DNA of 64,000 nt, taken from NCBI GenBank assembly GCA_047495785.1, contig JBLDXI010000032.1, positions 4,340,001-4,404,000 on the forward strand. Direction: 5' to 3'. The notes beneath the pieces are model-generated. The model was not told the origin of the DNA. It searched no databases and saw only the letters and a list, made by a program, of their open reading frames with translations. Below are positions 5,047 to 62,600 of the stretch, in pieces; the stretch's first letter is position 1, and every line of letters begins with the position of its first letter. The position numbers and the translations under genes were made by a program. The DNA comes from Lepidodermella squamata (lineage: Eukaryota > Animalia > Gastrotricha).

Positions 5047-8000
5047 ATGGCGTCGTTCAAATCCAGAGATGGCGCTCGTCGTCGCGCCATTCGAAGGATA
5101 GGCGTCGCCGAAGAAGACCACTTCTGCGAAGATCGCATCATCGAGCCGGTTCGAGTCAAACTCATCGCCCCACCAACGCCGCGACTCGCGCCACTGGCAA
5201 ATGAAGAAATTACCATCATAAACAACGTCAACTACCAAAGCATAGCCAACGATCTGCCGGCAGTTGCTAATGAAGAACCGGCGAGTACGTGTTACATCAG
5301 ACCTCAGGAAGAGGAGAAGCGATATGCCGATACGTCGTTCTATTACTGTACTCGGCAGAATTCTTTCAGAAGGCTGATGATAGCGCTGGTCGAGTCAAAG
5401 TGGTTTGGACGGTTTTCTGTGTTCCTGATTCTAGTCAATTGTGCCTCGCTTGGTTTCATGGACACATGCGATTTCAACTGCATAATCTACCGCTGCCAGG
5501 TCATGCAAACCATCGATCTATGCGTGTTTGTCTTCTTCACAATTGAAATGCTGATAAAAATGATCGCGATGGGAATAGTCGGGCCGCGGTCCTACCTGTC
5601 GGAGCCTTGGAATGTCTTCGACTTTGTCATCATTGTCGTCGGCTCGACCGAGTTCGTCTACGGCAAGGGTGCGACGGCGTTTTCGGCGATTCGAACCTTC
5701 CGCGTTCTGCGCCCACTGCGCGCCATAAATCGAATACCGAGTTTAAAAATTTTGGTCGAACTGCTGCTTGAAAGCTTGCCTATGCTCGGCAACGTGCTCA
5801 TGTTCACGTTTTTCATCTTTTTCGTCTTCGGAATCTGTGGCATTCAACTGTGGGCCGGTGTGCTGCGGCATCGCTGCTTTTTCCCTGATACGCCCGAGTT
5901 CAAGGCGCAAATCGAGGCGCAGAACTTGACCCACTTTCTTATGGAAATGCCTAATTTCTACCGACGGCCCGGTGGCGGCGACTTTGTGTGCAGTCCTCAG
6001 TTTGGCATGCTGCGTTGTGAAGACATTCCGTTATTCGAGTAAGTTCTATTCATTCGAATCGCATCTTTTTTAGCCGTAAATTTCTCACCCAGGCAAGAAG
6101 GGTCGATTTGCGACCAGATTTTCCACGATGATGAAGCGATAATTTGCGGCAACCTGGTACCGAATTACACCGACTGCCGGCCGGGCGCGCCGAACCCGTC
6201 TCGCGAGACGGTCAGCTTCGACAACATTGGCGCCGCGTGGATCGCCATCTTTCAAGTAATCAACCTCGAATCGTGGACTGAAGTGATGTACTTCGTCCAG
6301 GATGCTTACTCTTTCTGGGTGTGGATCTACTTTGTCATTCTCATTGTGGTAAGTTTGATTTTCAGAGAATTACTCCAAAAAATTGATTCACTTTCTTAGA
6401 TTGGCTCATACTTTGCTCTAAACTTGTGCCTCGTCGTTATTGCCAATCACTTTCAAGAAGCTAAAAGCCGAACGTCGTCGCGCCTCGGCGGCACTCGTCT
6501 CTCGATAGATAGCACCTCAATCTACCTCCAAGTGCTAGACCTCATAGCTTACGGCATTCGGCAGTGCTTCGACTTTTTAAGCTGTGAAATCCCGCCAGTC
6601 ATACGCCAGCAGCAGCAACAAGCAGCTACGGCTGACGGCCGATCCACCGGCGGCGGTGGGGGCGAAGACAATCCGAGACGTGAAACTAGCTCAGAGCAAC
6701 TCGACCTCATCATGAGAGTCAGTGCTTATGGCATTTGTAAGTATTTTGCATAAAATCAATAATTTTTTTATTTACTTTATTTATCAACAGCTTTATCTGC
6801 TGCTCCTGTTGCTAACGGAGATGTAAATCGTCAGAAGAATAAACGTCCCAGTGTTTTTGTCAGTAAGTTATAAATAGCCACACAGTAAAGCTAAAGGATA
6901 ATTTTTGTGTTTTTTTTCAATCAGCTTTCATTCAACGTGAAGTTTCAGGCAGCCGGAAGTTTTTGCGCGATTTGTTCGAGCACGACAGCGTTGCGATGAT
7001 CATCATGGGCGTCATTGTGCTGAATACGCTCATCATGGGAACAGAACACCACCAACAGCCGGAATCGCTGACTGTCGCCATCGAAAGCCTCAACGTCGCC
7101 TTCACGATATTCTTCGCCGTTGAACTCATGCTGAAAATATACGCTTATGGCTTTCAGGTGTACATTCGCGACGGCTTCAACATGCTCGATTTGATTGTGG
7201 TGGTTGTCAAGTAATTACTTTTTCATTTTTAATTCGGTACAATCTAAGCTCTCTCACTAATTTTATTCAGCATTTTAATCAGGTATCAACTGGAAACAGA
7301 TTTAAAATCATTTCGAAAGACGCCGAAGAGAATGGGGTTGACTGATTATAATTTTCTTTAGGCTTCAATTTTCTTTCAATTTTATTGAGGGTTGTAGAAA
7401 TTTAGCATGTGTACTTCTTCTGCCTAGACAGAATTTTATTTTGCGCATCTGGAAATTTTCGGGATTATGTGAATTAATTTCGGATCTGTGGTTAAATTTT
7501 ACTCTAATCTAACATTTTAGTCTTGCTGAACTGGTGCAAGGCTCCGGAACCGGGTTCTTTGTGCTGCGAGCCTTCCGGTTAGTTCGCCTCGTCAAAATCA
7601 TTCGCTTCTTGCCCGGCCTACAGCGCCAGTTGCTCATCATGATGCGAACCGTCGACAACGTCGCCTCGTTCTTCTTACTCGTCAGTCTTTTCCTGTTCGT
7701 ATTCGCCATCATGGGCATGTCGCTGTTCGGCTGCCAGTACTGCCCGTCGCTGAACCGGTACATGCGGCCGGAATTCAAAGGCGTCGACGTGCCTGTCGGC
7801 GAGTTCGAACTCAACGACACGCTGATATTCGACCTGAGCCGTACTTCGAATGTCACGCTCGAGACGCCGAATGAAGGCCGCGACCACAGCCACGAGATCG
7901 ACCTGATATCATACTTCATATGCCCGCGAACCAACTTCGACACTCTTGCTTCGTCTTTATTCACCGTTCTACAGGTTTAAATCGATTTCCTCGAAATTTA

Positions 8001-20185: not shown

Positions 20186-23100
20186 TTACTCGTACTTCTC
20201 AGCGAGCGCTAGGCCCGACGACACCATGCCGACAACGCAAATGATGCAGCCGAAGACGATGAGGAACACATCGAAGGCAACGGTCCAGTAGCTGAGCTGC
20301 GAGCGCAGCAATTTGATGTGGAACCAGCAAGGCCAGACCAGCGCCAGCATCGTGCCGGTGAATGAGCCGATGAAGCTCATCAGAATCGAAAAATGCGGCA
20401 CGAACAGCGCGACGAGCAGCGTGCCGACGATGAGGCCGGCGCGCGCGAAAATCGCCCACGGCTTGAGGCGCGCATCGCCCATCGTCGAGTCGCCGTAACA
20501 CGACGGGAAAATGGCGTCCGAATTCACCTGGTCCGATGAGGCGAAGAAGATGTCGCCGAGGATTTCGACCGATGTGAAGTACGGCAGCGGGTACGTGAGG
20601 AGCGCTTTCAGTATCAGAATTAAATTGACGATAGCCTTGAGGCCGCTGCCGGGTAGGTTGTTCGTGATGGCCTCTTTCGTTTCGTTGCCGAACGTCAAGA
20701 AAGGAATGTAGGCAAAAACGAGCTTCATTATTGACGCGGCGACAAATGTCCACTTAAGCATGGGCCAAAATTGGCGAGGCTCGGACATGTTTTCCTCGGT
20801 GAGCGGTAGAAAAATCTGCGCGACATTGCTGGACAAAATGAGACCCATCGCAAGGGCTATCGATTTGATGTTCAGGTCAAACTTCACCGCAGACCACTAA
20901 AATGAAAACAAATAGCAATATTAAAGCTTCGAATTTCACCCAACCAGAGTGCTCGAGTGGTTTAAGAGGTCAGACTTAAGATCTGATGGGAGTAATCCCG
21001 CGTGGGTTCGAACCCCACCTCTGGTAACACCATTTTTTTCCGTCCCGGAAGGCAACAAAATAATCAATGAAATAAATTATCAATAAAATGAATTAAGAAT
21101 TAAGAACTAAGGTAGATTTTCTAACTAGTAAACAGTTTAGCACGAATCGAATCTTTCTGAGTATTGATAGATAATTTATCTATCAATACTCAGAAAGATT
21201 CGATTCGTGCTAAACTGTTTACTAGTTAGAAAATCTACCTTAATTCGGTAGCTAATATGTTTCTAGCTTTGGTTTTAATATAATTGAATAATCCAACTCT
21301 AAATGAATTAAGTTAATATTTAATTTTAGTCGATCTGGCTTATAGCGCTTAGTATCTTAGGTATAGAGATTCCTTTAAGATTCGGCCCAGACATAAAATA
21401 GTCCAGCAAGGAAAACTCGATAATAACTAACCTGCCATTCAGAAATGTGAATGAGACAGTAACCGATGACGGCTACCATCATGACACCATGAACAGCCAT
21501 ACAGGCCGCTGAGATCCACGCGAGATGTTTAATGTTCTGCAAGAATGCATAGGGCAGCACGAGGATGCCGGAGATGAGGATCCACGTGTAGATGGTGAGG
21601 TCGGGGCCGGGGAACGAATCGCCGAGCAGGTCGCCGCACAGCACCAGGTAGATGACGCATGTCATGAGCAGCTCCGCTAGCTGGCTGAAATTAACGAGAG
21701 AAGGGCCTAGGCGACGGCCGAACACCGTGGCCGCCACCTCGGAGTAGGTGCGGCGAATGCGCACCCGCCCGCCCACGCCGTCCTGCTCGTACAGGCAGTC
21801 GACGAGAATGCGCCCCGTGTAACAGGCGACAGCGCCGAGGCCGAGAATGGCAGCGAGGGCCCAATAGCCGCCCTCGAGGACGGCGTATGGGAACCCGACG
21901 ACGAACATGCCCTGGATTGAGTTGTTGATGTTCCACGACGCCTCCCAGGCCGTGATGCGAGAATGCCGGCGTGCCCGCCCGTCGCCGAACTCTTCGAAGG
22001 TGTCCGACTCGGCGGTGCCTGAGCGTTTGAGGCTGTAGGCGCTGTCATCGGTGCCAATCACGCCGTAGCCGGTGTGCTGCACGTTTCGCTCGTCGTAGAG
22101 GCGAGATGTCTCGCGGGCGTTGCGGTGCTTACTCTGCGAGTCGTTGGCGCCGCCACCGCCGGTCTCCGACGCGCCACTGTCCGAGGCTGTTGACATGTTT
22201 ATCGGAGCTGTTGCGAGTACAAGAAATCAAAGTACGAAGCAAAAATTTAATAGAACAGACTCATTTAAATCATTGCCTATAAAAAATGCGATTTGAGTTC
22301 GTTATGGGCGTTACAAGTTCGTATAGTCCTTCGACAAGAAGCGAAATGATCTATCGACTAGATTTTTTCAATAAATATTTTCGTCTCAAAGATGTAAAAT
22401 AATGTCGCAAGGTTAATTTTGCTCTCTTCAGTGCCGCCGCTTGTGTCCTCAGCGGCACGGGGGTAAGACAGAGCAAGGAAGCAGCTAATAGCGTAGTTAT
22501 GACCGAAAACTACAGGCACAGCTACCTGGATCTTTAGCTGGGTGCGCACCTCAACTAGCAATTTTCAATATCCTGCAATTAAAATCGCAGGCTAAGGACT
22601 TTCCCTAATCATCACAGTGGACAACCGATTAATGTATCGAAGAACACTGAAAGATGCGTGAAGTGTGCTCATGAAAGGCAGAGAAGAGGCCATCATAACT
22701 GGGTCGTGGCAGAAAGTTTCCGAATCTCAGTTTTGAGTTAAAGACTATTTTCCGGCCTATAAAACGTAATTAACGATTTCCTATTATTACGGTTGGCACA
22801 AAAATACTGAAAACACTTTTATTGATGTAGCGTGCGGATTTGTGTTCGCTAATCGCCTGGCTCGAATCGATACGCGGCAGCTTAGAAGTACGGCATCATC
22901 ATCGCCATCGCCATCGTCGACGACGACGATGTAGATGATGATGATGATATGAACCGCGGTGGGAAAGCGAAAGAACGAGGAGGCGAAACGAACCTTGTTG
23001 CACATCGGCGCGGTTGCCGCTGTTGGTGCGGCCGCGCGCAGTCGACGGCGCGGCAAATTCACTGCTGCGACTCTCCGCGATACCGTAGTAGTCGGCGTCG

Positions 23101-43000: not shown

Positions 43001-46000
43001 CAGCGGCCGCTCCAAAACTATAGGAACACAACTAGCCAAAATGACGAAGAGGAAGAACGTCTCGTAATTCTTTGAGGCGAGCAGCTTTTTTAGTTTTCGG
43101 CGCAGACGGCTGTTACGATCGAACAAGCAAAGGGCGTTATCCGAACGGTAACGGCGTCGAATTTTCTCGGCAAATGTTGTTGGCTTCGGAATCCTGGCAG
43201 TGTGTTTCAGCAATTGGGGTAATAACTGTTTGAAACTTAAAATTAAAATCTAAATAATTCTAATAACGGGGCACATACCTCAGCAGCTCTTTCCTCGGCA
43301 AGCAGTTGTAGCACATCGTTCGACCCGAAAACAGCCAGCTCCAATTCAGGCCCATCGTCCTTAAAAAAAGAAGAAATGAACTTGAATTCGGAGAAAAATG
43401 CGAGTAACTTACATCCATTCCACAGAACCCCTCGACCAAAATTGCAATCAGCAGGTTGAAGATGATGTAGTTTCCGATGGCTACAACAGCCACGAAATAA
43501 ACCCCGGAAAAATTGCTGGTGAAGTGCATCCCGTCACGCATGATTGGCGACCAGCTGTCCTGGGTAAATATCTGCAAAAAGCCAAAACTCGTCGGCAGAA
43601 GGCAATCAAATCAAGAAAAACCTGTAGAACAGTGAACAGTGACTGGAATAATGAATCGAAGTTGATTTGCGAGCACTTCATGTGTCCCGGAAATGCCTCA
43701 GTAGCATTCGATTCACTCGTGGTATTTGAGGATAAGGACTGAAATTCAAAGTATTGATCGAGACTTAGCACCTGCATCATACAAGGCAGTGGCTCCAGCG
43801 AAGCGTTTCGACTCGCCTGTGTGTCGTTGTCTTTGTGCTGCTCCATTTGGCAGAATTTACATCCGAAAAGAGACATCCCGAATAACGAAGAAATAAACAG
43901 GAAAAAACTGAGAAGCATGAAAAATGTTGCGACGTTATCAACAGTTCGAATCATAGCCATGAGCTGTTTCTTTAAATCATCCGGCATAAAATGGATGATT
44001 TTCACGAGCCGAACAAGTCGGAAAAGCCTCAAGACAGAGAACCCGGACGGACCTGACCCTGAAGCAAGTAGCTCAGCGACACTTTCAAGTAGAAATGACG
44101 ATGCTATCACAGTTGAACAAACTTGAAATTTATATTACTTTATGCTTATGATGACAGTATCGATTATGTTGAAGCTGTTTGAGATGAATACGATCGGGCC
44201 GTAGGCGTAGAATTTGACGAGCAACTCGACAACAAAAACGAAGGTGAAAAGTATATTTACGACCTCGTGAATCAGCGTTACAACGTGCGACTAAATTTCG
44301 GAATCGAAAATTGATCAATTCAAAACTTAAAAAAATTCATACCTGTCCGTAATGCTCTGTCGCCATTACACAGGCATTTAGGACTATCATGATGCCGGTG
44401 ATGATGAGGGTAACGTTGTGCCCTAAAATATGGCGGAGAAACGCCCGGCTTCGCTGAACTGCCGCCCCGATGTGAACACAAAAGGCACACCGCTTCTTTT
44501 GTCTAGGAGGATACTCGCCCGGCTGTAGTTCGGGCGCTATTTTCTTCGGGAAAACTCGATGCCACGCGTGGTTTATCCAATGAATGAGCCATTTAATCAT
44601 TTGAGCATACAGGCCGTCATCCTTCTCATCGCCGGCCTCTGCCTCGGCTTCGGCGAGGATCGAATCTACTTCGCTCGGTTCTTTGGCAACAAGCTGTTCT
44701 TCCGCTTTCTGCAAAATAAATCTATATAACTGGACTATCAAATTTTGAATTTATGCTCACGAGTAGCTCGGTTTCGCGAGCTTTTGTTTTCGTAAATTGG
44801 GTAGCGACGACAACGAGGCAAAGGTTCACAGTGAGGTATGCCCCGATCTAAATATCAATGATCAAGGAATGACTCAAAGAAACTATTCGTTTACCATGAC
44901 GAGAGCAATGAAATAAATCCACACCCAGAAGGAATAGGCATCCTGTATCAAGTACATGATGTCTGTCCATGATTCGAGCGAGATGACTTGGAAGATTGCC
45001 AGCCAGGCGAAGCCAATGTTGTCAAAATTCAGCGTGCCTCTCAGCGGGTTCGGGCCATCTTGCCGACACTCGGTGTAATTTCTAACCCAACTACGGCAAG
45101 CTTCCAGCCGTTCGCGATCGTACGCAAATCTCTCCAAACACATTGATTTTTTGCGTCTGGAAAATGAAAATCAGGCAAATTGATATTGATTGAAAACGAA
45201 GCTTGTATTACTCTTCAAGCGCAATGTCGCTACAGCGAAGTAAGCCGAACGAATCCGTACAAATAAATTCGACTTCATCGGGCGGTTCATAGTAAGCTGG
45301 CATGAATGGTGGAGGCTATATTATGATCAAAAAAACATCCAACATCCGAGTGAAACAAATGCTGTTAGTTACCGTTGCATCTTTTGGAAAGAAACAGCGC
45401 TGCCTCAATATTCCAGCCCATAATTGGACAGCAACAATACCAAATACGGAAAACGTGAAGAAGAACAATATCAGCACTGTCAAGTTTGGATGTACTTCTT
45501 TTAAAAAATCGTTATAATTTTAGAAAACGCCGTTACCGTTGCCCATCATAGGCAAAATGTCCAGCAGGAGCGATATGAGTAATCGAAGGCTTTTAATTCT
45601 GTTAATTGCTCGCAACGGCCTCAAAACTCGAATTGCTCTGATGGCTGTGAAATTAACCCCACTGTTCGCGAAGATATACTCGGATGCACTAAATCCAACA
45701 GATGTTAAGTACATCTCAATTGCTAGGAAATTGACCCTAATACCTGATAATCACAATGAAGAAGTCGAAGCAGTTCCATGAATCCCTGAGGTAGGCATTT
45801 TCGCCGGCCCAGAAGCCGAGCGCGAGAATTTTGAGGCACATTTCGAAGAAGAAGAACATAAAAATGAAGTGTTCAACCTGCGACAGCACAGCGCAGGTCG
45901 GTTTAAGGCACGCGACATCGCACGGATCGGTCATGCCCAGCGCTATGCAGTTGACGAGAATGGCGACGAGGCTGACGCGTTTGAAGGCCTTGCTCGCGAT

Positions 46001-51065: not shown

Positions 51066-52929
51066 GTAAGTAGCGAGATTGCTTAGTTAATTTTTCTCAA
51101 GCCACTTTTTCCTTGGGACTAATAGTAGATGGACTCGACACTTCCTATCTAACGCATAATAAATCGTTCGGGGAGACCGGAGAGGCAAAAAACGTGTGAA
51201 TTGATCGCGTGTTGTTTTGATCGCAGAAAAAAATGGCCGATTAACAAAAAATTCAACCGCAAAACCAGCATCCCACCATTACGCGAATTTTATGTCGTCG
51301 ATTTTACGCTGGGCACATGTTTACTCCAAAACAACACACCTTTTTCTTGAATTAATTGAACCATCGCATAGATCATAGTTCGAGGATCGCAGCGATGAAA
51401 AATTTATCGGCTATTTAACTTTAGAAGCCAGTGCAATTTCGCTTTGATTATAAGCTACCGTGATCAGACCTGCGCCTTGTGCGCATAATTTTTAAGGCTG
51501 ATCAATGATATTTTCACTGACTTTTGGGGTGAAAATGCACAAAATAAGGCTTGTTCATCGGACTCATTGGCCGATTACAATAGACTTCGCAGTTCACGCA
51601 GTGAATTTAATATTAAACGATTCCCCACAATTCCATAGGTATATCAATTTACGATGCTATTTGGCATTTTGCTGGCATTTTGGCATTATTGCATTTTGAA
51701 ACAATTTCATGGCTAATATGGTAGAAATCGTAACATCTAAAAGGGCATTTGATCGGAGGCCAATTGACATTATGTTCCGCTTTCCATTACATCTCAACTA
51801 TTTTTAAACAAATGAATCAAATAATGGGGAAAGGTATGGATAAAAATATTCACACGAAAGGATGCTAGTATGTTTAAAAAAGTTATATTGAAGTTATATT
51901 TTAACTTTGCTAAATATTTTGCAAACTTTATTCCGAAATCAAGCGGAACCAACCTCTAATCCTAACGATCCTAACGCTAACTTTCGCTACTGAAAAATTG
52001 GCTAGAAAAGCCAAACCCAAATTTAAATGGTGTAAAAATAGTTAGGATTACGCGGAACCTTTTTATCAATGCGCCGAAAAATCCTTGCAAATTTAGAGAT
52101 AATTATTCCCATATTCAGTTGTTCTTCTGAATAATGAAAAAAAATTCTTATTTAGGAAGTTGAGATTTAATTATTAATTTGTTGAATAATATTTTATTTT
52201 TTGGCATCGCAGCGTGCGTCCTTCGTTGCTCTTTTTGAATCTTCAAGAATTATTTTCATATCGCTTATACCTGCGGAGAAATCGTGACCCCATTGCCCAA
52301 GATTGGCAATTTTTCGCCGCTTAATGGGAGAAGGCTGTGTGTTGTTGTAAAAAAAGATTATTTTCATTCATAAATTTAGCGTGAAAAAAAATCGCGATTC
52401 AGCCATTTTTTGCTCCCGTCCGAATGATTTTGAGGAGTGTCGAGTCCATCTACTATTAGTCCCAAGACTTTTTCGGCTAATAGATGCCGCAGTTATGTCA
52501 TATCGAAGAAAAGTTCTGGACGTTCCTCCTACTTCAACACGTCGGCATTGTACTTGGATTTGCGGTCATTTTCATTATAACAATCTTCGAGGAACCTTTA
52601 CACTATTCATTTAGAATAAGAAATGCATGACCTTTGCACTTATTATCTATGACTAAAATGTTTACATTAAAAAGAATCACTGAATAGGCATGCGGGTCAT
52701 TTCTTTCCTCTCGAAAACACAGATTTTATGAAGACGCGATATTCAAAACTTCTGTGCATCATCCCAAGCGGCCGATGTGTGAGATGAAAACAAAGCACTT
52801 TTATTGCATTTCGATTTTGACACTGCTCGCCCGATGTAACCGTGCTACTCTATTATACATACTTTGACCGCTGAAATTCATCGCGCCGTGAAGTTCCTGA
52901 CTAATGAATTGAATACATTTTTCGAACAG

Positions 52930-55900
52930 ATGGCGACGAGATCGCCGAATAGTGAGGTGTTGCAGGCCAAGTCATTCCTTTGCCTAAGCCTGGACAATCC
53001 ATTCCGGCGAGCTGCTATTAGACTCGTCTCCTCAAGATAAGTTCTTGCTATGTTGCCATCATCATTTATCCCATATCATTTTATATACATGGTTCGAGCG
53101 ATTTTCAATATTTATGATCGTAGTCAATTCAATGGCTCTTGGCATGGTCGACCCATGTGACGTCAAATGCCGCAAGCCAGTTTGCGCCACACTCCAGGTT
53201 GTTGAAGACGTAATATCAGCCTTTTTCGCGGTCGAAATGTTGTTAAAAATGCTAGCGATGGGCATAACTGGAAAGGGCGCCTATTTAGACGAGTCGTGGA
53301 ACCGCTTCGACTGCTTCATCGTCATAATTGGCACTTCCGAGTACATATTCGCCGACCAAGAGATCAACTTGTCAGCTATCAGAGCCATTCGAGTTCTGCG
53401 ACCACTTCGGGCGATCAACAGAATTTCGAGCCTCCGTCTTTTGGTCACTCTGCTGCTTGACATTCTTCCCATGCTAGGCAATGGTAAGGTCTCAACGTTA
53501 CACCTTGAAATCTTTGAAATTGCCCTTTTCAGTGATGATTTTCTGCTTCTTCATTTTCTTCGTATTCGGCATTGTTGCAGTTCAACTTTGGGCCGGGATG
53601 CTTAGGCATCGGTGTTTTTTCCCTAATGATCTGTTCACATCTAACTCAACCGCCCAACCGCCGCCTTTCATGCCTCAGTACTACAGCCAGCCACATCGCG
53701 AATTCATTTGCTCACCCGCGGGCGGGGAGACTCACTGCGGGCAGATACCGCAATACGAAAAGCACAGTTCGATGTGCGCCGACATGTTCCCGGCTTCTAC
53801 CGAACCGACCAAACTAATGCTGTGCCGCCGCTGGGTTGCGAACTACACCGAGTGCCGGCCTGATGGGCCTAATCCAGCCCGCGGTACCATTAACTTCGAC
53901 AACATTGGATCGGCGTGGATCGCTATTTTTCAGGTCATATCGCTCGAATCTTGGACGGAGGTCATGTACATGATGATGGTGAAGCATATTCGCAAAGTTC
54001 TTGAACATTTTCTAAATCGAGTTATGCAACACAGGATTCGTTTTCGTTCTGGGTTTGGATCTTTTTTATCCTGCTTGTCTTGGTAATTCTGGAGTATTGA
54101 TTTTTCTATTCGTTTAAAATTTGAAAATGTGTAGATTGGGTCCTATCTAGCGGTTAATTTGTGCCTCGTGGTCATTGCAACTCAATTTTCCGAGACGAAA
54201 TTGCGCGAGGCTGAAAGGATGGTAAGTTAGGCGAGGACATTTTTTTTAATGCATTGCTCACGCTTTCTGCTCTTAGAAAAAAGAGCGACTGGCTGAAATC
54301 GATTCTGCAAGCTCATCCTCATCAATGTCGTCGATTATGTCGACTGACGACGGTCTGTACGCCCAGATAATCGACCTGATATTCCACTATATTCGCTATG
54401 TAAAACGCAAGCTGTGCCGAGTGAAATCGAAAAAGCGTCACCTTAGTCTTCTCGTAATGTCCGTTAATGTTCCTGGCAACCGGCGTCTCACTCGCCAGGG
54501 CTCTTCGGTTGGCGGCGGGGCTTGCCCGGGTTGCCGACATCGTCTGCGTCTGATGCGACATGGCCGGCTAAGCAAAGCTGAGAGCAAAGAGCCGTGTCTG
54601 CTATGCGGTCGGTCGCCGAATTTCGAGCAGCTATTGTCGAAATTTCCGTACGGAGAAAAGCGATACTGCAAAAACAACTGCCTTAACGGTTTTGTCTCCT
54701 GTATCCAACGATCTCGAACTTGGCTAAGGGACCTACTCGAGCATGATGCGTGTGTTGCCGCTGTCATGGGTACGATTGTTGTCAATGCCGTAGTGATGGC
54801 GCTCGAACACCATAACCAACCAGAAGCGCTCACTTCTTTCATCGAGGTCATGAATATGATCTTTACTACAATTTTCGTCACCGAGCTCTGCATCAAGCTG
54901 TTTGCATACGGGTTCGAAGCTTTCATTCGAGAGGCCTTCAACGTCTTGGATGCTGTTGTTATCGCGATTAAGTACCTAATTAAATTTTTTATTTTTCTTG
55001 TTTAATCTCGATGTGTTTGAAGTATTGCGGAGCTGTTTTTCGACCAGGACGGTTCAAGCTCTGGCTTTGCGGTGTTGAGGCTGTTCAGGCTTGTGAGGAT
55101 CGTCAAAATCATTCGATTTCTACCGGCTCTGCAAAAGCAACTAATGGTTATGGTGGCTGTTGTCGATCACGTGGCCACTTTCTTCCTTCTCCTCGGATTT
55201 TTCTTATTTATTTCGTCACTGTTGGGCATGTCGCTTTTCGGCTGCAAATTCTGCGAGAAGACCACACGAGGAAACGGCGGAAATATTCTTTTGAACGGTA
55301 CAATGTCCACCTGTGCTCTTCAGGTAAACTCATATCCAGGAACAACAGCAAACAAACTATAAAATAATTCAGGTTATCGACATCGATCAAGTCGAGGCAC
55401 TGGAGCGTGGCTTAGCGGCCATGCGTTCAGCTGCTGACGATGAAGAGGAAGTCTACTACGGCTGCTCTATAGCCAACTTCGATTCACCCTTCCAAGCCAT
55501 TTTCACTGTTCTACAGGTGTTCACTCAAGACGATTGGGGTGCCGTAATGCAGGATGGCATGCATTACACGTCACCGTGGGCTGGTGTTTATTTCGTTTCT
55601 TTGGTAACCATCGGCAACTACATCATTTTCAACCTTCTGGTCGCCATTCTTGTCGAAGGTTTCAGCAGCAAAAGCGTAAGAAATTTTCACCCTTAACTAT
55701 AGCTACTACTATAATTCGGCTTTGCAGCAAGACGATTTGCTCGATTGCGAGAACAAAGCTTTGGAAATTATAAAAAAGAAGACTGAAACAAACCTCCAGT
55801 TAGATCCGGAGGAGCTCGAGAATGGCGCTGTCGATGGGGCAAAAGCAGAGAGCAATTTTGCCCGTGCAGCTCGTTGTTGTCGCTGCATGGGCAGCGTTTT

Positions 55901-58900
55901 CGTTCGTTGTTGGGCAGCTGAGCTTTCAGATCGGGCGTTGTTCATCTTTCCAAGAGATGCCTTCCCACGGCGGCAACTTCGTCGCATGTTCGCGTCCGAG
56001 CTCTGCGATAAAATCTTCTTCTTCGTCATTATTGGCAGCTGTTTGGTTATCGTAATCGAACGGCCTGGAATTGACAAAGACGGCTTGGAGCGTTTATTGA
56101 TAACCTATGCCAATTACGCTTTCACGGTGATTTTCTTCCTGGAAGCTTTTACTAAAATCATCGCGTATGGCTTCTGCCTCGGTCGCAAGACATACCTGCG
56201 CAATGGCTGGAATGCGCTGGATCTTTTCTTGCTCACCATTGCGATTGTCGATATCACGCTCGAATTTGATGATTCGGACAAGAAGCTCCTACAGGCGCTC
56301 CGAGTTCTTCGGCTCCTTCGCGCGCTACGTCCTCTACGCATAATCAGCCGATCGCCAGGCTTGCAAATCGTCCTCCAAACATTGATGATCTCAATCAAGC
56401 CCATTGGGAATATTAGTAAGTTTGATAAAGCGACCCATAAAGATTCATTTCTCTTCTGATTTAGTACTCATTTGCTGCTTTTTCTTCTTGATATTCGCGA
56501 TATTGGGTGTACAGCTGTTCAGCGGGTGTTTCGCGCGTTGCTTAGCGCCTCGATCTGCTGTTATCCCGAACGCATCAGCAATCGTATCAGCTTCAGGTGC
56601 CGAAACCTACTCGGAGTGGGCCACTGAAGCTTTGGCTAATGTTAAAACGCGTAACGACTGCACAGCAGCCGGCTTTGACTGGGAAACTGACAGCTATAAC
56701 TTCAACTCTCTGCCTGAGGTGGGTTCTGTCTGAAATGCCAATGAAAAGCTTATTAATCCTCCATTCGTATGCGTCAGGCTCTGATGGCTCTTTTTGTATT
56801 CGCAACTCTTGACGGGTGGACTGACATCACCCGCAGCGGCGTCGACTGCGTGTCGCCCGACCAGCAGCCCATTCGAGATTACAATATGTGGGCCTACGGC
56901 TACTTTATTTCCTTCCTGCTCATCGTCTGCTTCTTCGTATGATGCAACAACTTTGTTTCGAGAGCTTATATTTTTTGAGCTTTTGAAAGGCACTGAACAT
57001 GTTTGTTGGCGTGGTTGTTAATAATTTCCAGAATGTCCAACGTCAGGTGAAACAGCACATCGAGAAACAAGCGACCGGCGAAGCTAGAGCATCAGATGCG
57101 TTTGCTGCAGCCTTAGCCAAGCAGTATACTCGGGCAAACTCAACAGGTATCGCAGTTTTGCGAAATCCAAATTAAAAAAATCGCACTTTCGAGATGTTTT
57201 TTTGCCTAATCTTCTGTTCATTCCTGTATAGTATCGTACGCATCTGGACGACGTGTGACTGTCGGTGAGAGGAGCTATTATTAGAGATTGCCTCAGATCT
57301 TAGTATAATCTCTCTATTAGTGACCCAATTTTGGTTCGATTTCCCCGTTTGGCGACGACGCCTGTGTTTGCTTGTAATGCACAAGTACTTTGAGTATACC
57401 GTCATTGGAGCGACTGTTCTAAACGTTATCATGATGGTAATTACTATCTGTCCTACCTCCTCACTTTCACTTCAATTGAACCTTTTAAGACGTGCGAGTA
57501 TTACATGATGCCACCGTGGCTTGTAAGCACCATTACCATAGCTTCTTACGTGTTTCTCGGCCTACTCGCTATCGAAGTCAGCCTTAAGTTGACAGCATTC
57601 GGACCAGCTCGCTATTTTTCCGATCGTTGGAATCAAAGTGATGTTGCCATAGTACTTCTCTCAATCTGTGGAATCATATTGGAAGAACTGCCTAAGGAGT
57701 CTGTTCCCGTCAATCCAACTGTCGTTACCTTTCCACGCGTTTTCCGAATCGTTCGAATCCTCAAGCTGTTAAAATCAGCTTCGGGCGTTAGAAAGCTCCT
57801 GGAAACATTAAGCGAAGCAATCCCTCAAGTCATCAATCTCTCTCTGCTGTTCTTCCTACTCTTTTTCATCTATGCTTCCCTCGGCGTGGAACTCTACGGC
57901 AATTTCGACTGCCATTACGAAGTTTGCGAAGGCCTGTCGAGACATGCGAACTTCAAGAACTTCGGCATGGCGCTTCTAACGCTATTCCGCATCTTCACCG
58001 GCGATAACTGGAACGGCATTCTGAAGGACATTCTCTGGATGTCGAACGACGAACAAGAGTGCACTACCTCGGGCGATAAGCATGGCCACGATCATGAGGC
58101 CGTTGGAGGCATTGTATGCTAACAAGTTTCTTTCAGCATTTGCTCTTTGACTCTCTTCATTTCGTAGGCTTGCGGAGTGATACACTCTGTTGCGCCAGTG
58201 TATTTTGTCTCTTTCGTGTTACTCGCCCAATTCGTGCTGATCAACGTTGTAGTTGCAGGTAATAATAGGCCTTATTATGATGCCATAACTTCCACATATT
58301 AAGCTTTGTTCATTTCAATTTGAAAACCCATGGCTTCATCTAAATTTTTGCGTAATACTTTAGTTCTGATGAGCCAACTTGAAGACGCTGCGAAGCGTAT
58401 CGAGAATGAAAATGCACAGATGGAGGAGGCGAAGAGACTAAGCAAGCGTAGTTCGAGGTCAAAATTCCTAGACGAAGACACAATCCTAAGTCGGAGCACG
58501 TCTCGCTATTCGGTATGGTTTCAACTTTAAAATTTCCTTGTTCGATTATTCACAAAAATCCTCAGGCGACCAATTACAGTGGTATTGCAATGCACACATT
58601 GAACGGGCATAATTCGACAGATACTATGGCGAGATACCGCGAGCAGGAGACGAGCTTGACCGATGACGATGGACCCGTAATGACACCCGTATCGACGCGC
58701 CGACTGGCCGGCATGATGAGCCCGCGCATGCTAGCCTCGTTCGATGAAGATGAAGACGAAGACGAAGAGTTTTTGAGGCCATTGCCCGAAATAATCAACG
58801 AAGACCACCTCTGGCTGACCCGCGTAATGGAGCCTGAAGCTGCTAGCGTAGCTTCTTTTGAGTACATCCTGCAACACCAGGTAACATCCGCGTTTTTATC

Positions 58901-59360
58901 AGAATTAGTGGCTAAAAATGCGTTGAATCGATAGGACATCTGCGATGCAGAGTACTTAGCGATGCGGCTTCGAAATTTGACGCTTGATACAGATTCGGCG
59001 GTTGTCAGTGATATCACGATGTCGCCGCTGGTCTCGCCCAGCGGCTCGCCTGTTCGCGTCGTTCATCGGGCGCGCTCTTTCGACCGGCCGCCGGCCGTGC
59101 GCCAAACCATCACCCCGTGCCGCTCGCCCCTCGACATCATCGACGACTGTCCTCGCGTGCCTAAGCGCAGTACACCCGGGCGCTACGTCTACCTCCACAA
59201 CACGCCGACGATGATTGCACCCGTCAATAATGGTTTGGCGCGCACCTTTGCTCCGCCGGCTTCTCTCGAATCGCGGCGAGCACGCTTTGCAGGGAAACTA
59301 CCCGCCGTGCCCGAATCAGCAAGCGCTGCCTCTTTCATCGATATTATCGAATATATCTGA
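52930..59360 (+). CDS. Cav3: T-type (Cav3-like) channel, paralog D, complete four-domain gene; first intron is AT-AC
   Basis: N-terminal [20 protein letters not shown] pore ISLESW (53946), [15 protein letters not shown] (Cav3 gating brake), DII pore FTQDDW (55529), DIII pore ATLDGW (56811), DIV pore FTGDNW (58003). Confidence 0.94.
53037..53088 (+). other. Non-canonical AT-AC intron (52 nt, phase 2)
   Basis: TCA AG|ATAAGTTC...TTTTATATAC|A TGG TTC GAG restores ..VSSRWFER.. . Read unspliced there is an in-frame TAA, and no AG occurs between 53042 and the WFER codons. Confidence 0.78.
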
Positions 59361-59664: not shown

Positions 59665-62600
59665 ATGCCTGGATTGCTGTTGTCGCCCCCGCGCCAGGAA
59701 TCGACGGTCAGCACCGGCGATTTCCGCGGTAGCACGGTATATTTGGACGTTCCATCAGTTAGTGGCCACCACGCAGTGTCCCCGGCAGTGGGCAGTAGTG
59801 CCAAGCCGTCATCAGAACCTGTCTACGCTGAAAAGTCACTGCTGTGTCTTACCACCGATAATTGGCTGAGGCGTATTGCAATCCGCGTCATCGCCTCGCC
59901 GTGGTTCGAACGTGCCTCGATGCTCGCCATCATCGCAAATTGCCTCGCTCTTGGTTCAACCGACCCGTGCGATGTCGCTTGCAGAACAGCAACTTGCCAA
60001 GCTATTCAATTCGTCGAGTTGCTGATATTTCTGTTTTTCGCCGTCGAAATGCTCATCAAAATGCTGGCGATGGGTGTTTTCGGGTCAAACTCATATCTCG
60101 CTGAGACCTGGAATCGCCTTGACTGCTTCATCGTTCTAGCAGGGTAACAAACTTGAACCAATTTTCTTTCAATGACTGAGTTTACATTCTAACGCAGTCT
60201 GACAGAATACGCGTTTGCAAGCCATGGGGAAGTTAACCTGTCAGCGATTCGGGCATTTCGCGTCATGCGGCCTCTTCGAGCGATAAATCGAATTTCAAGT
60301 ATAGAACTTTTTATGTGGAGTTTTATGTGGAATACAAAGTCTTTTTTCTCAGGTTTGCGCCTCCTAGTGAATCTTCTACTGGATATTTTACCGATGTTGG
60401 GGAATGGTTGTTTTAGCTTTTCATAATTGAATTCTTCCCAACGCGATTTTATTTCTAGTGCTAGTGTTGTGCTTTTTCATCTTCTTCATTTTCGGCACCG
60501 TGGCTGTGCAGCTATGGGCTGGAATTCTTCGAAACCGCTGCTTCTTCCCAGACGACATCTCGCCACCCGACTTCATGCCAGCATATTACCAACAGAGTCA
60601 TGCAGATTTTGTGTGCTCGGCGAGTGGATTCGGCATGTTCCTTTGCTCAGATTTGCCGAGCATCGAACGAGAATCTTCGATGTGCGGCGATCTATTCGAA
60701 TTTGATCCTGACAAAATGGTCGAATGCGCTCGTTGGGTGACAAATTACACCGAATGCCGACCGGGTGGGCCTAACCCGGCGCGAGATACTGTCAGCTTCG
60801 ACAACATCGGGTTAGCAATAAGCTTCATTGGACAAAATTTGTCACTATTTTTCTAACTCATAGGTACGCGTCGATTGCCATCTTCCAGGTGATATCACTG
60901 GAGGGTTGGACTGACATAATGTATCTGGTCATGGACGCCTTTTCATTTTGGGTCTGGGGCTACTTTCTGCTGCTCGTACTGGTAATCTCTAATTAGATTG
61001 ATCTAAAGGGGACATTATTATGTCATTTTTTAGCTTGGATCTTACCTTGCTGTCAATCTCTGCCTCGTAGTCATTGCTGCTCAATTTTCTGTCACAAAAA
61101 TGCGTGAAAAAGCAAAGCTGGTAATTTATTATAAAATATTGACAATCAAAATTGTAAAGAATTTTTCAATCTCAGAAACGTGAAAGACTAGAGCTCGCTA
61201 GGTCTCAAGTCTCTCTGCTACCTCGTTGGACCTTTCGACTTTCGGCAGCTCGAACGGAGACTCAAGCGACAATTTATACGTCCAGATTCTAACTCTGATT
61301 TTCCACTACGCTCGCATCGCTTTCCGATGGGTGCGCGATCGGATTCGCGGCCAACCACCGCCCGTTGTCGACGTCCTTGTAACCGGGCATCTGCGCCCAA
61401 GCCACAGCAATTTCAGGATTCGAACTTCAAGCGTCGCGTCGCAGAGAGCAGCGCTTCGCCAGTCGTCTACCGTTTGTCCGAAATGTCGCGCATCGCCCGC
61501 CAGTTCTTACCGGCCCCTTGAGAAGCCACTCGAGTCGCGACAAGTTTCGTTCAATAACGAACTAGAACTGCCGCCCATGCACAGCCGGTGCCATCTTTGC
61601 GGCGAAGTTTTCGACGTAGCGCTGAGCCGTGGCAGTTCCGTCAACGATAACGCCGATGACGATGTGCTTCAGGAGGTAACACTTAAAGTTCGCCGAAGCA
61701 CCGTCTACTGGACGACACTAGGTAAGTATATATAGCCATGCAAGAACCATCGGTTTAGAAGAATCAAATTGGCAGAAAAAATACAGAGATTCCGTCACAC
61801 GAGTCGTGCGTGGATGAAGCGTTTCATCGAAAGCAAATTCATCAGCTTGTTCATCATGTCAACAATAGCAATCAACGCCGCAATTATGGCTGCGGAACAT
61901 CACAATCAGGTCGGTATTTTTTACTTTCAACCGCGCCATTATGCATATATTGAGAATTTCAGCCTGCAATGCTGACACACTTCATGGAGATTTCCAATAT
62001 TGTTTTCACTGTTATTTTTGCCGTCGAATTTTTACTCAAAGCTTACGCTTATCGATTTGAAGAGTTCATCATCGAGCCGTTCAACGTCATCGATGCGGCT
62101 ATTGTAGTGATCAAGTAAAAATTTGATTCCTTATAAAGAATTTCCCTTGCAATTCCGTATTTCAGTGTTCTTGATCTCGTTTCGTCCGGATCCTCCGGCG
62201 GTGGGTCTGGTTTCGCAGTTTTACGCTTATTCCGTCTCGTCCGTATTGTGAAAATAGTTCGATTCTTGCCTGCCCTTCAGCGCCAGTTGCTAATAATGAT
62301 TCACACTGTCGACCACGTGGCAACGTTTTTCGTTCTACTAACTTTTTTCCTGTTCATATCGGCTCTTCTTGGCATGTCGCTTTTCGGATGCAAGTTCTGC
62401 GTTATCTACTCAACCCAGCATGGGTCTTCTGAAGAGAGCGCGAATGCTGTACCCGAATTTGTCTCAGTTGGCAGGTGTACATATTCTGTAAAATCGCTCG
62501 CCGACTATTTAGCTCAGTTAGCTACGACCGAGTCAGGTGGAGACCAAAATGCAACGAATGCAACGAATGCGCCAGTTCCGCAAGAGCTGATGGAATGCCC

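What the first reader, a model, noticed from the sequence alone, without database searches (positions are those of the whole stretch)
53037..53088. AT-AC intron at the ancestral minor-intron site of Cav3, with a major-spliceosome-like donor and kept in only one paralog
Seen: a 52-nt phase-2 intron ATAAGTTC...TATAC just before WFER in paralog D. B, C and E have no intron there. The donor resembles GTAAGT with G-to-A, not the U12 consensus ATATCCTT, and no TCCTTAAC branch site is visible. Established, from recall and to be verified: vertebrate Cav3 genes have a U12-type AT-AC intron just before the IS1 WFE motif, and rare U2-type AT-AC introns exist. Inference: a U12-to-U2 conversion that kept AT-AC termini, perhaps after minor-spliceosome loss; inefficient splicing could throttle paralog D because retention gives an immediate stop.
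Basis: partly seen in the sequence, partly recalled or inferred. Interest (0 to 1): 0.78.

Follow-up and report, generated by a model that had tools for sequence, protein, structure and literature searches.

The report
Major-type AT-AC intron in calcium-channel gene
A 52-base intron with rare AT-AC ends sits in a T-type calcium-channel gene exactly where other animals have a minor-spliceosome intron, but it carries ordinary (major) splice signals in a genome where I found no minor splicing machinery; this is a rare, already described evolutionary route, and here several gene copies have it, not one.

Summary
Window 53037-53088 is a 52-nt, AT-rich, phase-2 insert, ATAAGT...TATAC. Removing it joins ...[13 protein letters not shown] to R-WFER with the same spacing as intronless paralogs B, C and E.

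The site is the ancestral minor-intron site. Daphnia magna has a textbook U12-type AT-AC intron (ATATCCTT donor, TTCCTTTAAC branch site) at the same codon and phase.

Here the signals are major-type. The donor AG|ATAAGT fits the canonical U1 of this genome, a T-rich tract abuts the 3' AC, and there is no U12 branch site. Searches of the 121-Mb assembly found no U11, U12, U4atac, U6atac, PDCD7 or CENATAC. U1, U2 and single-copy RNase P RNA were found.

"Kept in only one paralog" is wrong genome-wide. Three more Cav3 copies and a related species have ATAAGT...AC at this site, two copies have ATAAGT...AA, and others have GT-AG or no intron.

This matches the known rare "AT-AC U12 to AT-AC U2" pathway (Na-channel genes; Lin 2010, Wu & Krainer). 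It is a new member of a known kind, in a lineage that seems to have lost minor splicing.

No RNA data were available, so splicing itself is inferred. The "throttle" idea is untested. The scan noted the same thing before on two other stretches of this genome (s1-391906, s1-395238).

The parts
52930..53036 (+). Exon 1 of Cav3-like paralog D. It runs from the ATG to the last two bases (AG) of the split Arg codon and encodes M...[18 protein letters not shown].
   Evidence: The motif [11 protein letters not shown] aligns with paralogs B, E and F. AACAG lies directly upstream of the ATG.
53037..53088 (+). 52-nt AT-AC intron, phase 2. The donor is AG|ATAAGT (7/9 match to the U1-complementary consensus) and a T-rich tract precedes the 3' AC. 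There is no U12 donor or branch site.
   Evidence: GC is 0.29. The same termini are conserved in paralogs F, C38 and in a related species.
53089..53483 (+). Exon 2 of D: the third base of the Arg codon, then WFER...MLGN (IS1-IS4 of domain I; Ion_trans).
   Evidence: PF00520; the best named hits are T-type calcium channel alpha-1 subunits.
53484..53532 (+). Next intron of D, an ordinary GT-AG one (GTAAGG...TTTTCAG, 49 nt). It serves as the local standard for size and 3' signal.
53533..59360 (+). Rest of gene D. Long open exons cover domains I-IV and the C-terminal tail, and the stop is near 59358. No sign of decay.
   Evidence: stop-to-stop ORFs with conserved channel motifs. Exon borders were not all mapped.
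5398..5403 (+). Equivalent point in paralog B (AAG TGG = K-W): no intron.
45986..45991 (-). Equivalent point in paralog C (AAG GCC = K-A of ...IASK-AFKR): no intron.
59899..59904 (+). Equivalent point in paralog E (CCG TGG = P-W): no intron.

Best explanation
53037-53088 is a genuine spliceosomal intron with AT-AC ends in an intact T-type (Cav3-like) calcium-channel gene.

It descends from the ancient U12-type AT-AC intron that nearly all four-domain Na/Ca channels carry just before IS1. In this lineage it has been taken over by the major (U2-type) spliceosome.

Inferred mechanism:
1. Canonical U1 pairs with AG|ATAAGT at every position except +1. All six AT-A[C/A] copies have the perfect TAAGT, which offsets that mismatch.
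2. The T-rich tract next to the 3' end plays the part of the usual TTTCAG signal.
3. In the second step the A(+1)/C(-1) pair replaces the usual G/G contact between the first and last intron bases.

The AT-AC state was already present in the ancestor of the local Cav3 expansion. It persists because changing only one terminus would break splicing (the 'trapped' state). Some copies escaped to GT-AG and others lost the intron.

Shown: the sequence anatomy, homology of site and phase, conservation of the termini across paralogs and one related species, and failure to detect minor-spliceosome parts.

Inferred: that the intron is spliced at these bases, and by the major spliceosome.
For: Junction and frame.

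Same site and phase as a true U12-type intron in Daphnia magna (CC|ATATCCTT ... TTCCTTTAAC-17 nt-AC|G TGG TTC GAG).

Literature on the D1S1 U12 site: PMC6259924. Fly Ca-alphaT intron 1 is an AT-AC U12 intron conserved in human: PMC2831892.

ATAAGT...AC at the same site in F (L013), the C38 copy (L014) and a related species contig (L039), and ATAAGT...AA in L015 and L023, all with unrelated interiors.

No U12 branch motif; pyrimidine content of positions -14 to -3 is 0.67-0.92.

U11, U12, U4atac and U6atac covariance models find nothing. U12 and U6atac core patterns find nothing real. PDCD7 and CENATAC families find nothing.

The same tool finds 47 U2, 42 U1 and the single RNase P RNA. All 30 U1 copies inspected have the canonical ACTTACCTG end.

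Gene D is intact.

Known precedent: U2-type AT-AC II introns, G1A rescued by G(-1)C (PMC1557818), and 'a rare pathway from AT-AC U12 to AT-AC U2-type' (PMC2831892).
Against: No transcript evidence. Word searches found no RNA-derived protein fragment of D or F.

The snRNA searches score only the 40-50 best of thousands of first-look candidates, so very divergent minor snRNAs could be missed. The protein-family negatives had no eukaryotic positive control.

The paralogs share ancestry, so six ATAAGT donors are not six independent events.

The paralog tree on 78 residues is unresolved, so the order of gains and losses is not established.
Confidence: 0.75

Rival explanations
1. The intron is still removed by a minor spliceosome whose snRNAs and splice-site consensus have drifted so far (ATAAGT instead of ATATCC, no TCCTTAAC) that standard models miss them.
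For: AT-AC and AT-AA ends are the classic and the rare minor-type termini (PMC1557818, Table 2). The snRNA searches scored only a subset of candidates.
Against: All four snRNAs and two minor-specific protein families are undetected, while single-copy RNase P RNA is found. The donor is a perfect match to canonical U1 apart from +1. A T-rich tract abuts the 3' end, as in local GT-AG introns. All 11 introns at this site in the genome lack U12 motifs.
Confidence: 0.08
2. Nothing is spliced at these bases. Paralog D would then be disabled by a 52-bp insertion, or it would use the weak GT-AG pair 53027/53098, or it would start downstream.
For: No RNA evidence. An in-frame GT-AG pair exists. D has a very short N-terminal exon.
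Against: The rest of D is open and conserved over four domains. The alternative pair has a 3/9 donor and no pyrimidine tract, and it deletes WFE, which 11 of the 14 Cav3-like copies compared keep. The same AT-AC arrangement is kept in F, the C38 copy and a related species. Exon 1 keeps the family motif [11 protein letters not shown].
Confidence: 0.07
3. The AT-AC state is kept for regulation: slow removal or retention (immediate TAA, nonsense decay) sets the dose of this paralog, as proposed for minor introns.
For: U2-type AT-AC splicing is reported as less efficient than GT-AG (PMC1557818). Retention gives a stop at 53038.
Against: The stop is automatic for any xTAAGT donor in phase 2. Sister copies work with GT-AG or no intron at the site. 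The 'trapped' two-mutation barrier explains persistence without any function (PMC2831892). No expression data exist.
Confidence: 0.1

Closest known systems
U2-type AT-AC ('AT-AC II') introns of vertebrate SCN4A/SCN5A (Wu & Krainer 1997, 1999, as cited in PMC1557818 and PMC2831892)
   Same: AT-AC termini with a U2-like donor (G at +5, A at +4, T at +6). They sit in a four-domain voltage-gated channel gene and derive from a U12-type AT-AC intron. They are thought to be 'trapped' because both ends must change together.
   Different: A different intron position (here the D1S1 site, which is still U12-type in vertebrates). Here the genome shows no minor snRNAs at all. Several paralogs carry it, two of them with AT-AA. 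Major-spliceosome dependence was shown by experiment there and is only inferred here.
The U12-type AT-AC intron at the D1S1 site of Cav3/Cav1/Cav2/Nav genes (PMC6259924; Drosophila Ca-alphaT intron 1, PMC2831892; Daphnia magna locus L073)
   Same: Same codon position, same phase 2, same AT-AC ends, directly before WFER.
   Different: Those have ATATCCTT donors and a TTCCTTRAC branch site 10-20 nt from the 3' end. The intron here has ATAAGT and a T-rich tract, with no branch motif.
Vestigial U12-like GT-AG introns of C. elegans, spliced by the major spliceosome after loss of the minor one (PMC1557818)
   Same: Former minor introns surviving in a lineage without a minor spliceosome, with species-typical U2-type 3' ends.
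   Different: Those keep a U12-like donor with GT-AG ends. Here the donor is fully U2-like but the AT-AC ends are kept. That survey found no U2-type AT-AC intron in C. elegans.

Membership tests
U12-type (minor) intron | 5' splice site [A/G]TATCCTT | tested here: not met
   The donor is ATAAGTTC. All six AT-A[C/A] copies have ATAAGT.
U12-type (minor) intron | Branch site TTCCTTRAC about 10-20 nt upstream of the 3' end, with no pyrimidine tract | tested here: not met
   The best match has 3 mismatches. A T-rich tract abuts the 3' AC. The Daphnia homologue does have TTCCTTTAAC 17 nt from its AC.
U12-type (minor) intron | Genome encodes U11, U12, U4atac and U6atac snRNAs and minor-specific proteins | tested here: not met
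   No hit for RF00548, RF00007, RF00618 or RF00619, for the core patterns, or for PF16021 and PF14968. Controls U2, U1 and RNase P RNA were found. Absence is not proven, because the searches are filtered.
U2-type AT-AC (type II) intron | AT-AC termini with a donor matching the U2-type consensus except at +1 (G at +5) | tested here: met
   AAG|ATAAGT matches CAG|GTAAGT at 7 of 9 positions. U1 genes have the canonical 5' end.
U2-type AT-AC (type II) intron | Species-typical U2-type 3' region (pyrimidine tract next to the 3' end) | tested here: met
   The intron ends ...CATTTTATATAC. The Y fraction of positions -14 to -3 is 0.67, and 0.83-0.92 in the other AT-AC copies, against about 0.58 in a crude local intron set.
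U2-type AT-AC (type II) intron | Splicing depends on U1/U2/U4/U6, not on U11/U12/U4atac/U6atac | not testable with these tools
   This needs snRNA depletion or blocking, or minigene assays. It is only inferred here from the undetected minor snRNAs.
U2-type AT-AC (type II) intron | The junction is actually used in mRNA | not testable with these tools
   No transcript-derived sequence of D, F or the other copies was found.
Cav3 (T-type) calcium channel alpha-1 subunit | Four Ion_trans domains, with closest named relatives being T-type channels | tested here: met
   Exon 2 hits PF00520 proteins named T-type alpha-1G/H/I at 55-63% identity. ORFs cover four domains. The selectivity-filter residues were not examined.

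The most novel reading that the evidence does not exclude
This lineage (other agents of the scan take it for a gastrotrich; I did not check that) has lost the minor spliceosome entirely. Such a loss is not listed among the known animal losses (nematodes, myxozoans, oikopleurids, tardigrades). Its major spliceosome would then routinely splice not only AT-AC but also AT-AA introns. The Cav3 family would be a natural series that shows every step of minor-to-major conversion at one site: AT-AC, AT-AA, GT-AG in the same phase, GT-AG slid by one base, and intron loss.
Probability: 0.4. Interest if true: 0.6.

Novelty: new member of a known kind. Interest (0 to 1): 0.45.

Why it matters
Minor introns are thought to convert to major ones almost always by way of a GT-AG subtype switch. 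Direct AT-AC-to-AT-AC conversion has been described for only a few vertebrate introns.

Here the best-known minor-intron site of ion-channel genes shows that route in an invertebrate whose genome seems to lack the minor machinery. One genome holds sister copies in all alternative states, which makes it a convenient natural test set for three things:
- how strictly the major spliceosome couples the first and last intron bases;
- how strong U1 pairing compensates an A at +1;
- how former minor introns survive when the minor spliceosome is lost.

It also matters for annotation. Gene finders that allow only GT/GC-AG will truncate or mis-join these channel genes.

Tried and rejected
- GT-AG alternatives. 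None keeps WFE. The only in-frame pair, 53027/53098, is weak.
- Junction shifted by one base (TA...CA). This gives inconsistent ends across copies (CA, CA, CT, CG, AG, AG), whereas AT...A[C/A] is consistent.
- A variant U1 that pairs with A(+1). All 30 U1 copies inspected are canonical.
- The one 3-mismatch hit to the U12 5' region (L040). It is at control level and matches no Rfam family.
- An ORF-only intron finder as a chance test and as a donor baseline. It gave too many false positives to be a clean baseline, so I use it only for intron size.
- A tree of 78 aligned residues to order the events. It is unresolved except that the C20 copy (AT-AA) and the C42 copy (no intron) are sisters.
- Transcript evidence through the word search. 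No fragment from this species was found, and the query with F exon 2a found no candidate.
- Wu & Krainer 1999 and Chanfreau 1994 are not held in the library.
- Spliced models. One conceptual join of the L039 exons was printed inside a local script, only to check the frame.

Full report
**What is there.**
The window is G000:C32:4340001-4404000 of a 121-Mb, 151-contig eukaryotic assembly with introns of about 50 nt. It holds four copies of a T-type (Cav3-like) calcium-channel gene. Their domain-I starts lie at 5401 (+, B), 45988 (-, C), 53090 (+, D) and 59902 (+, E).

In D an ATG at 52930 opens a short exon encoding ...[18 protein letters not shown], which ends with AG at 53036. Then come 52 AT-rich bases (GC 0.29) that begin ATAAGTTC and end TATAC (53037-53088). 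Then comes A TGG TTC GAG CGA. Removing exactly these 52 bases gives LVSS-R-WFER. That is the same spacing as LVESK-WFGR in B and VIASP-WFER in E, which are uninterrupted here, as is C.

Reading through gives TAA at once. No AG lies between 53042 and 53097, so no GT-AG intron can preserve WFE. The only in-frame GT-AG pair (53027/53098) has a 3/9 donor and no pyrimidine tract, and it deletes VSSRWFE.

The rest of D is open and conserved across four domains to a stop near 59358. Exon 2 finds T-type channel subunits at 55-63% identity.

**The site is the ancestral minor-intron site.**
Fux et al. (PMC6259924) describe the D1S1 splice site as a rare U12-type AT-AC site shared by Nav1, Nav2, Cav1, Cav2 and Cav3. 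Lin et al. (PMC2831892) list intron 1 of the Drosophila T-type gene as an AT-AC U12 intron conserved in human.

I checked position and phase on a real sequence, the Daphnia magna T-type gene (L073, reached from hit P0002). It reads ...RMITN CC|ATATCCTTTT, then 4.5 kb, then TTTTCCTTTAAC, 17 nt, AC|G TGG TTC GAG. That is a textbook U12-type AT-AC intron at the same codon and the same phase 2, directly before WFER.

**The signals here are major-type.**
I extracted every intron at this site in the genome:

| Copy | Locus | Donor ... 3' end | Length | Phase |
|---|---|---|---|---|
| D | window | ATAAGT...AC | 52 nt | 2 |
| F | L013, 5 kb beyond the window | ATAAGT...AC | 265 nt | 2 |
| Contig C38 copy | L014 | ATAAGT...AC | 60 nt | 2 |
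| C12 copy | L015 | ATAAGT...AA | 418 nt | 2 |
| C20 copy | L023 | ATAAGT...AA | 55 nt | 2 |
| H | L010 | GTAAGT...AG | 98 nt | 2 |
| C15 copy | L024 | GTAAGT...AG | 53 nt | 2 |
| High-voltage-type channel gene | L026 | GTGAGT...AG | 57 nt | 2 |
| High-voltage-type channel gene | L031 | GTGAGT...AG | 57 nt | 2 |
| A | L011 | GTAAAT...AG, one base to the right | 54 nt | 0 |

- B, C, E, G and the C42 copy have no intron at the site.
- None of the eleven introns (the ten above plus the related-species one described below) has an ATATCC or GTATCC donor.
- None has a TCCTTAAC-like motif at branch-site distance.
- The AT-A[C/A] introns all have AG or AA before a perfect ATAAGT, which is 6-7 of 9 matches to the U1-complementary consensus.
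- They all have a T-rich run right up to the 3' end. The pyrimidine fraction is 0.67-0.92 in positions -14 to -3, against about 0.58 in a crude local intron set.
- All 30 inspected U1 genes carry the canonical ACTTACCTG 5' end, so no compensating U1 variant is needed or seen.

**Conservation beyond the genome.**
A Logan genomic contig from another sample (L039, SRR23086389) was found through hit P0057. It encodes a channel closest to F (71-88% identity) and then to D. At the same point it reads ACA TGG AA|ATAAGT..., 54 nt in all...TTTTTTAC|G TGG TTC GAG. With that junction the reading frame stays open from its ATG through IS5 (a local frame check only).

The interiors of all these introns are unalignable and their lengths differ (52 to 418 nt). 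Only the termini and the donor hexamer are kept. That is what selection on splice signals looks like. It also excludes assembly error and a private insertion in D.

**Minor spliceosome.**
Covariance-model searches of the whole assembly found no U12, U6atac, U4atac or U11. The same tool found 47 U2 genes, 42 U1 genes and the single-copy RNase P RNA.

A 24-nt pattern for the U12 5' region gave one 3-mismatch hit, equal to the reversed-pattern control and not an Rfam match. A 30-nt U6atac core pattern gave none. The Pfam families PDCD7 (59K) and CCDC84/CENATAC gave no candidate.

These negatives are filtered searches without a eukaryotic positive control for the protein families. Loss of the minor system is therefore likely, not proven. 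Larue & Roy (PMC10639083) list nematodes, myxozoans, oikopleurids and tardigrades as the animal lineages without it. Other agents of this scan take the genome for a gastrotrich, which that paper does not mention. I did not test the identity.

**Best explanation.**
The intron is the old U12-type AT-AC intron of the D1S1 site. It is now recognised by the major spliceosome through strong U1 pairing and a local-style 3' tract, with A(+1)/C(-1) taking the place of the usual G/G contact in the second step.

This is the 'rare pathway from AT-AC U12 to AT-AC U2-type' that Lin et al. proposed for sodium-channel genes, with the same hallmark (G at +5, A at +4, T at +6). They offered the same reason for persistence: both ends must change together. 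Sheth et al. (PMC1557818) counted 15 such introns in human, 6 in mouse, 3 in fly and none in worm. They also note that G1A is rescued by G(-1)C in yeast and human, less efficiently.

The spread of the state over divergent copies on four contigs, plus a second species, implies that it predates the family's expansion. GT-AG copies and intronless copies are later escapes. The 78-residue tree is too weak to order these events, apart from the sister pair C20 (AT-AA) and C42 (no intron).

- 'Kept in only one paralog' holds only inside the window.
- The 'throttle' idea is untested. The immediate stop is automatic for any xTAAGT donor in phase 2.
- Splicing itself rests on inference. I found no transcript-derived sequence.

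**Verdict.**
This is a real and well-supported feature, and a new example of a known but rare kind. It gains interest from the apparent absence of the minor spliceosome and from the AT-AA sister copies. The scan had already flagged the same phenomenon on two other stretches of this genome (s1-391906 = F, s1-395238 = the 418-nt C12 intron). I checked both in sequence.

Noticed in passing
L015 (G000:C12, near 1123279, minus strand) and L023 (G000:C20, near 2650111, minus strand): Two Cav3 copies have ATAAGT...TTTCAA|G TGG at the same site: AT-AA ends, or TA...AG one base to the right. Removal restores KLVNWR-WFER, matching the intronless sister copy L025 (KLVEWR-WFER). I found no paper describing a U2-type AT-AA intron.
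   Followed up: partly
L011 (G000:C32:4335652, paralog A, just upstream of the window): The intron at this site is GT-AG but in phase 0 (CGG|GTAAAT...GATAG|TGG), one base to the right of the ancestral phase-2 position. This is a one-base intron slide.
   Followed up: partly
L010 (G000:C32:4479031, paralog H) versus window 53080-53089: H, the copy closest to D (69% identity in exon 2), has GTAAGT...TTATATACAG|G, whereas D has ...TTATATAC|A. This could be a trace of how AT-AC became GT-AG, or chance in AT-rich sequence.
   Followed up: no
G000:C32:4335652-4479423 and contigs C38, C12, C20, C42, C15, C13: Large expansion of Cav3-like genes. Eight copies lie within about 145 kb on C32 and at least six are elsewhere; most animals have one to three.
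   Followed up: partly
L018 (G000:C32:4417850, paralog G): The frame breaks about 20 residues after WFER. This is either an extra intron or a decayed copy.
   Followed up: no
window 52925-52932: AACAG lies directly before the ATG of D. It looks like a 3' acceptor, possibly for the spliced leader that another agent reported in this genome (s1-421969).
   Followed up: no
window 20943-21026 (+): An 84-nt tRNA gene (Rfam RF00005, 58.5 bits). It is long for a tRNA, so it may have a long variable arm or an intron.
   Followed up: no
G000:C15:3.24-3.29 Mb; C7:1.0-1.6 Mb; C16:0.98-1.07 Mb: U2 (at least 47 copies) and U1 (at least 42 copies) genes occur in large clusters. All inspected U1 copies are identical at the 5' end.
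   Followed up: partly
P0022 (ENA metagenome contig, 150 aa): An environmental sequence resembles this genome's Cav3 family (it shares the DPCD motif). It is continuous across the D1S1 site (...RMTESVWFER...), like the intronless copies.
   Followed up: no
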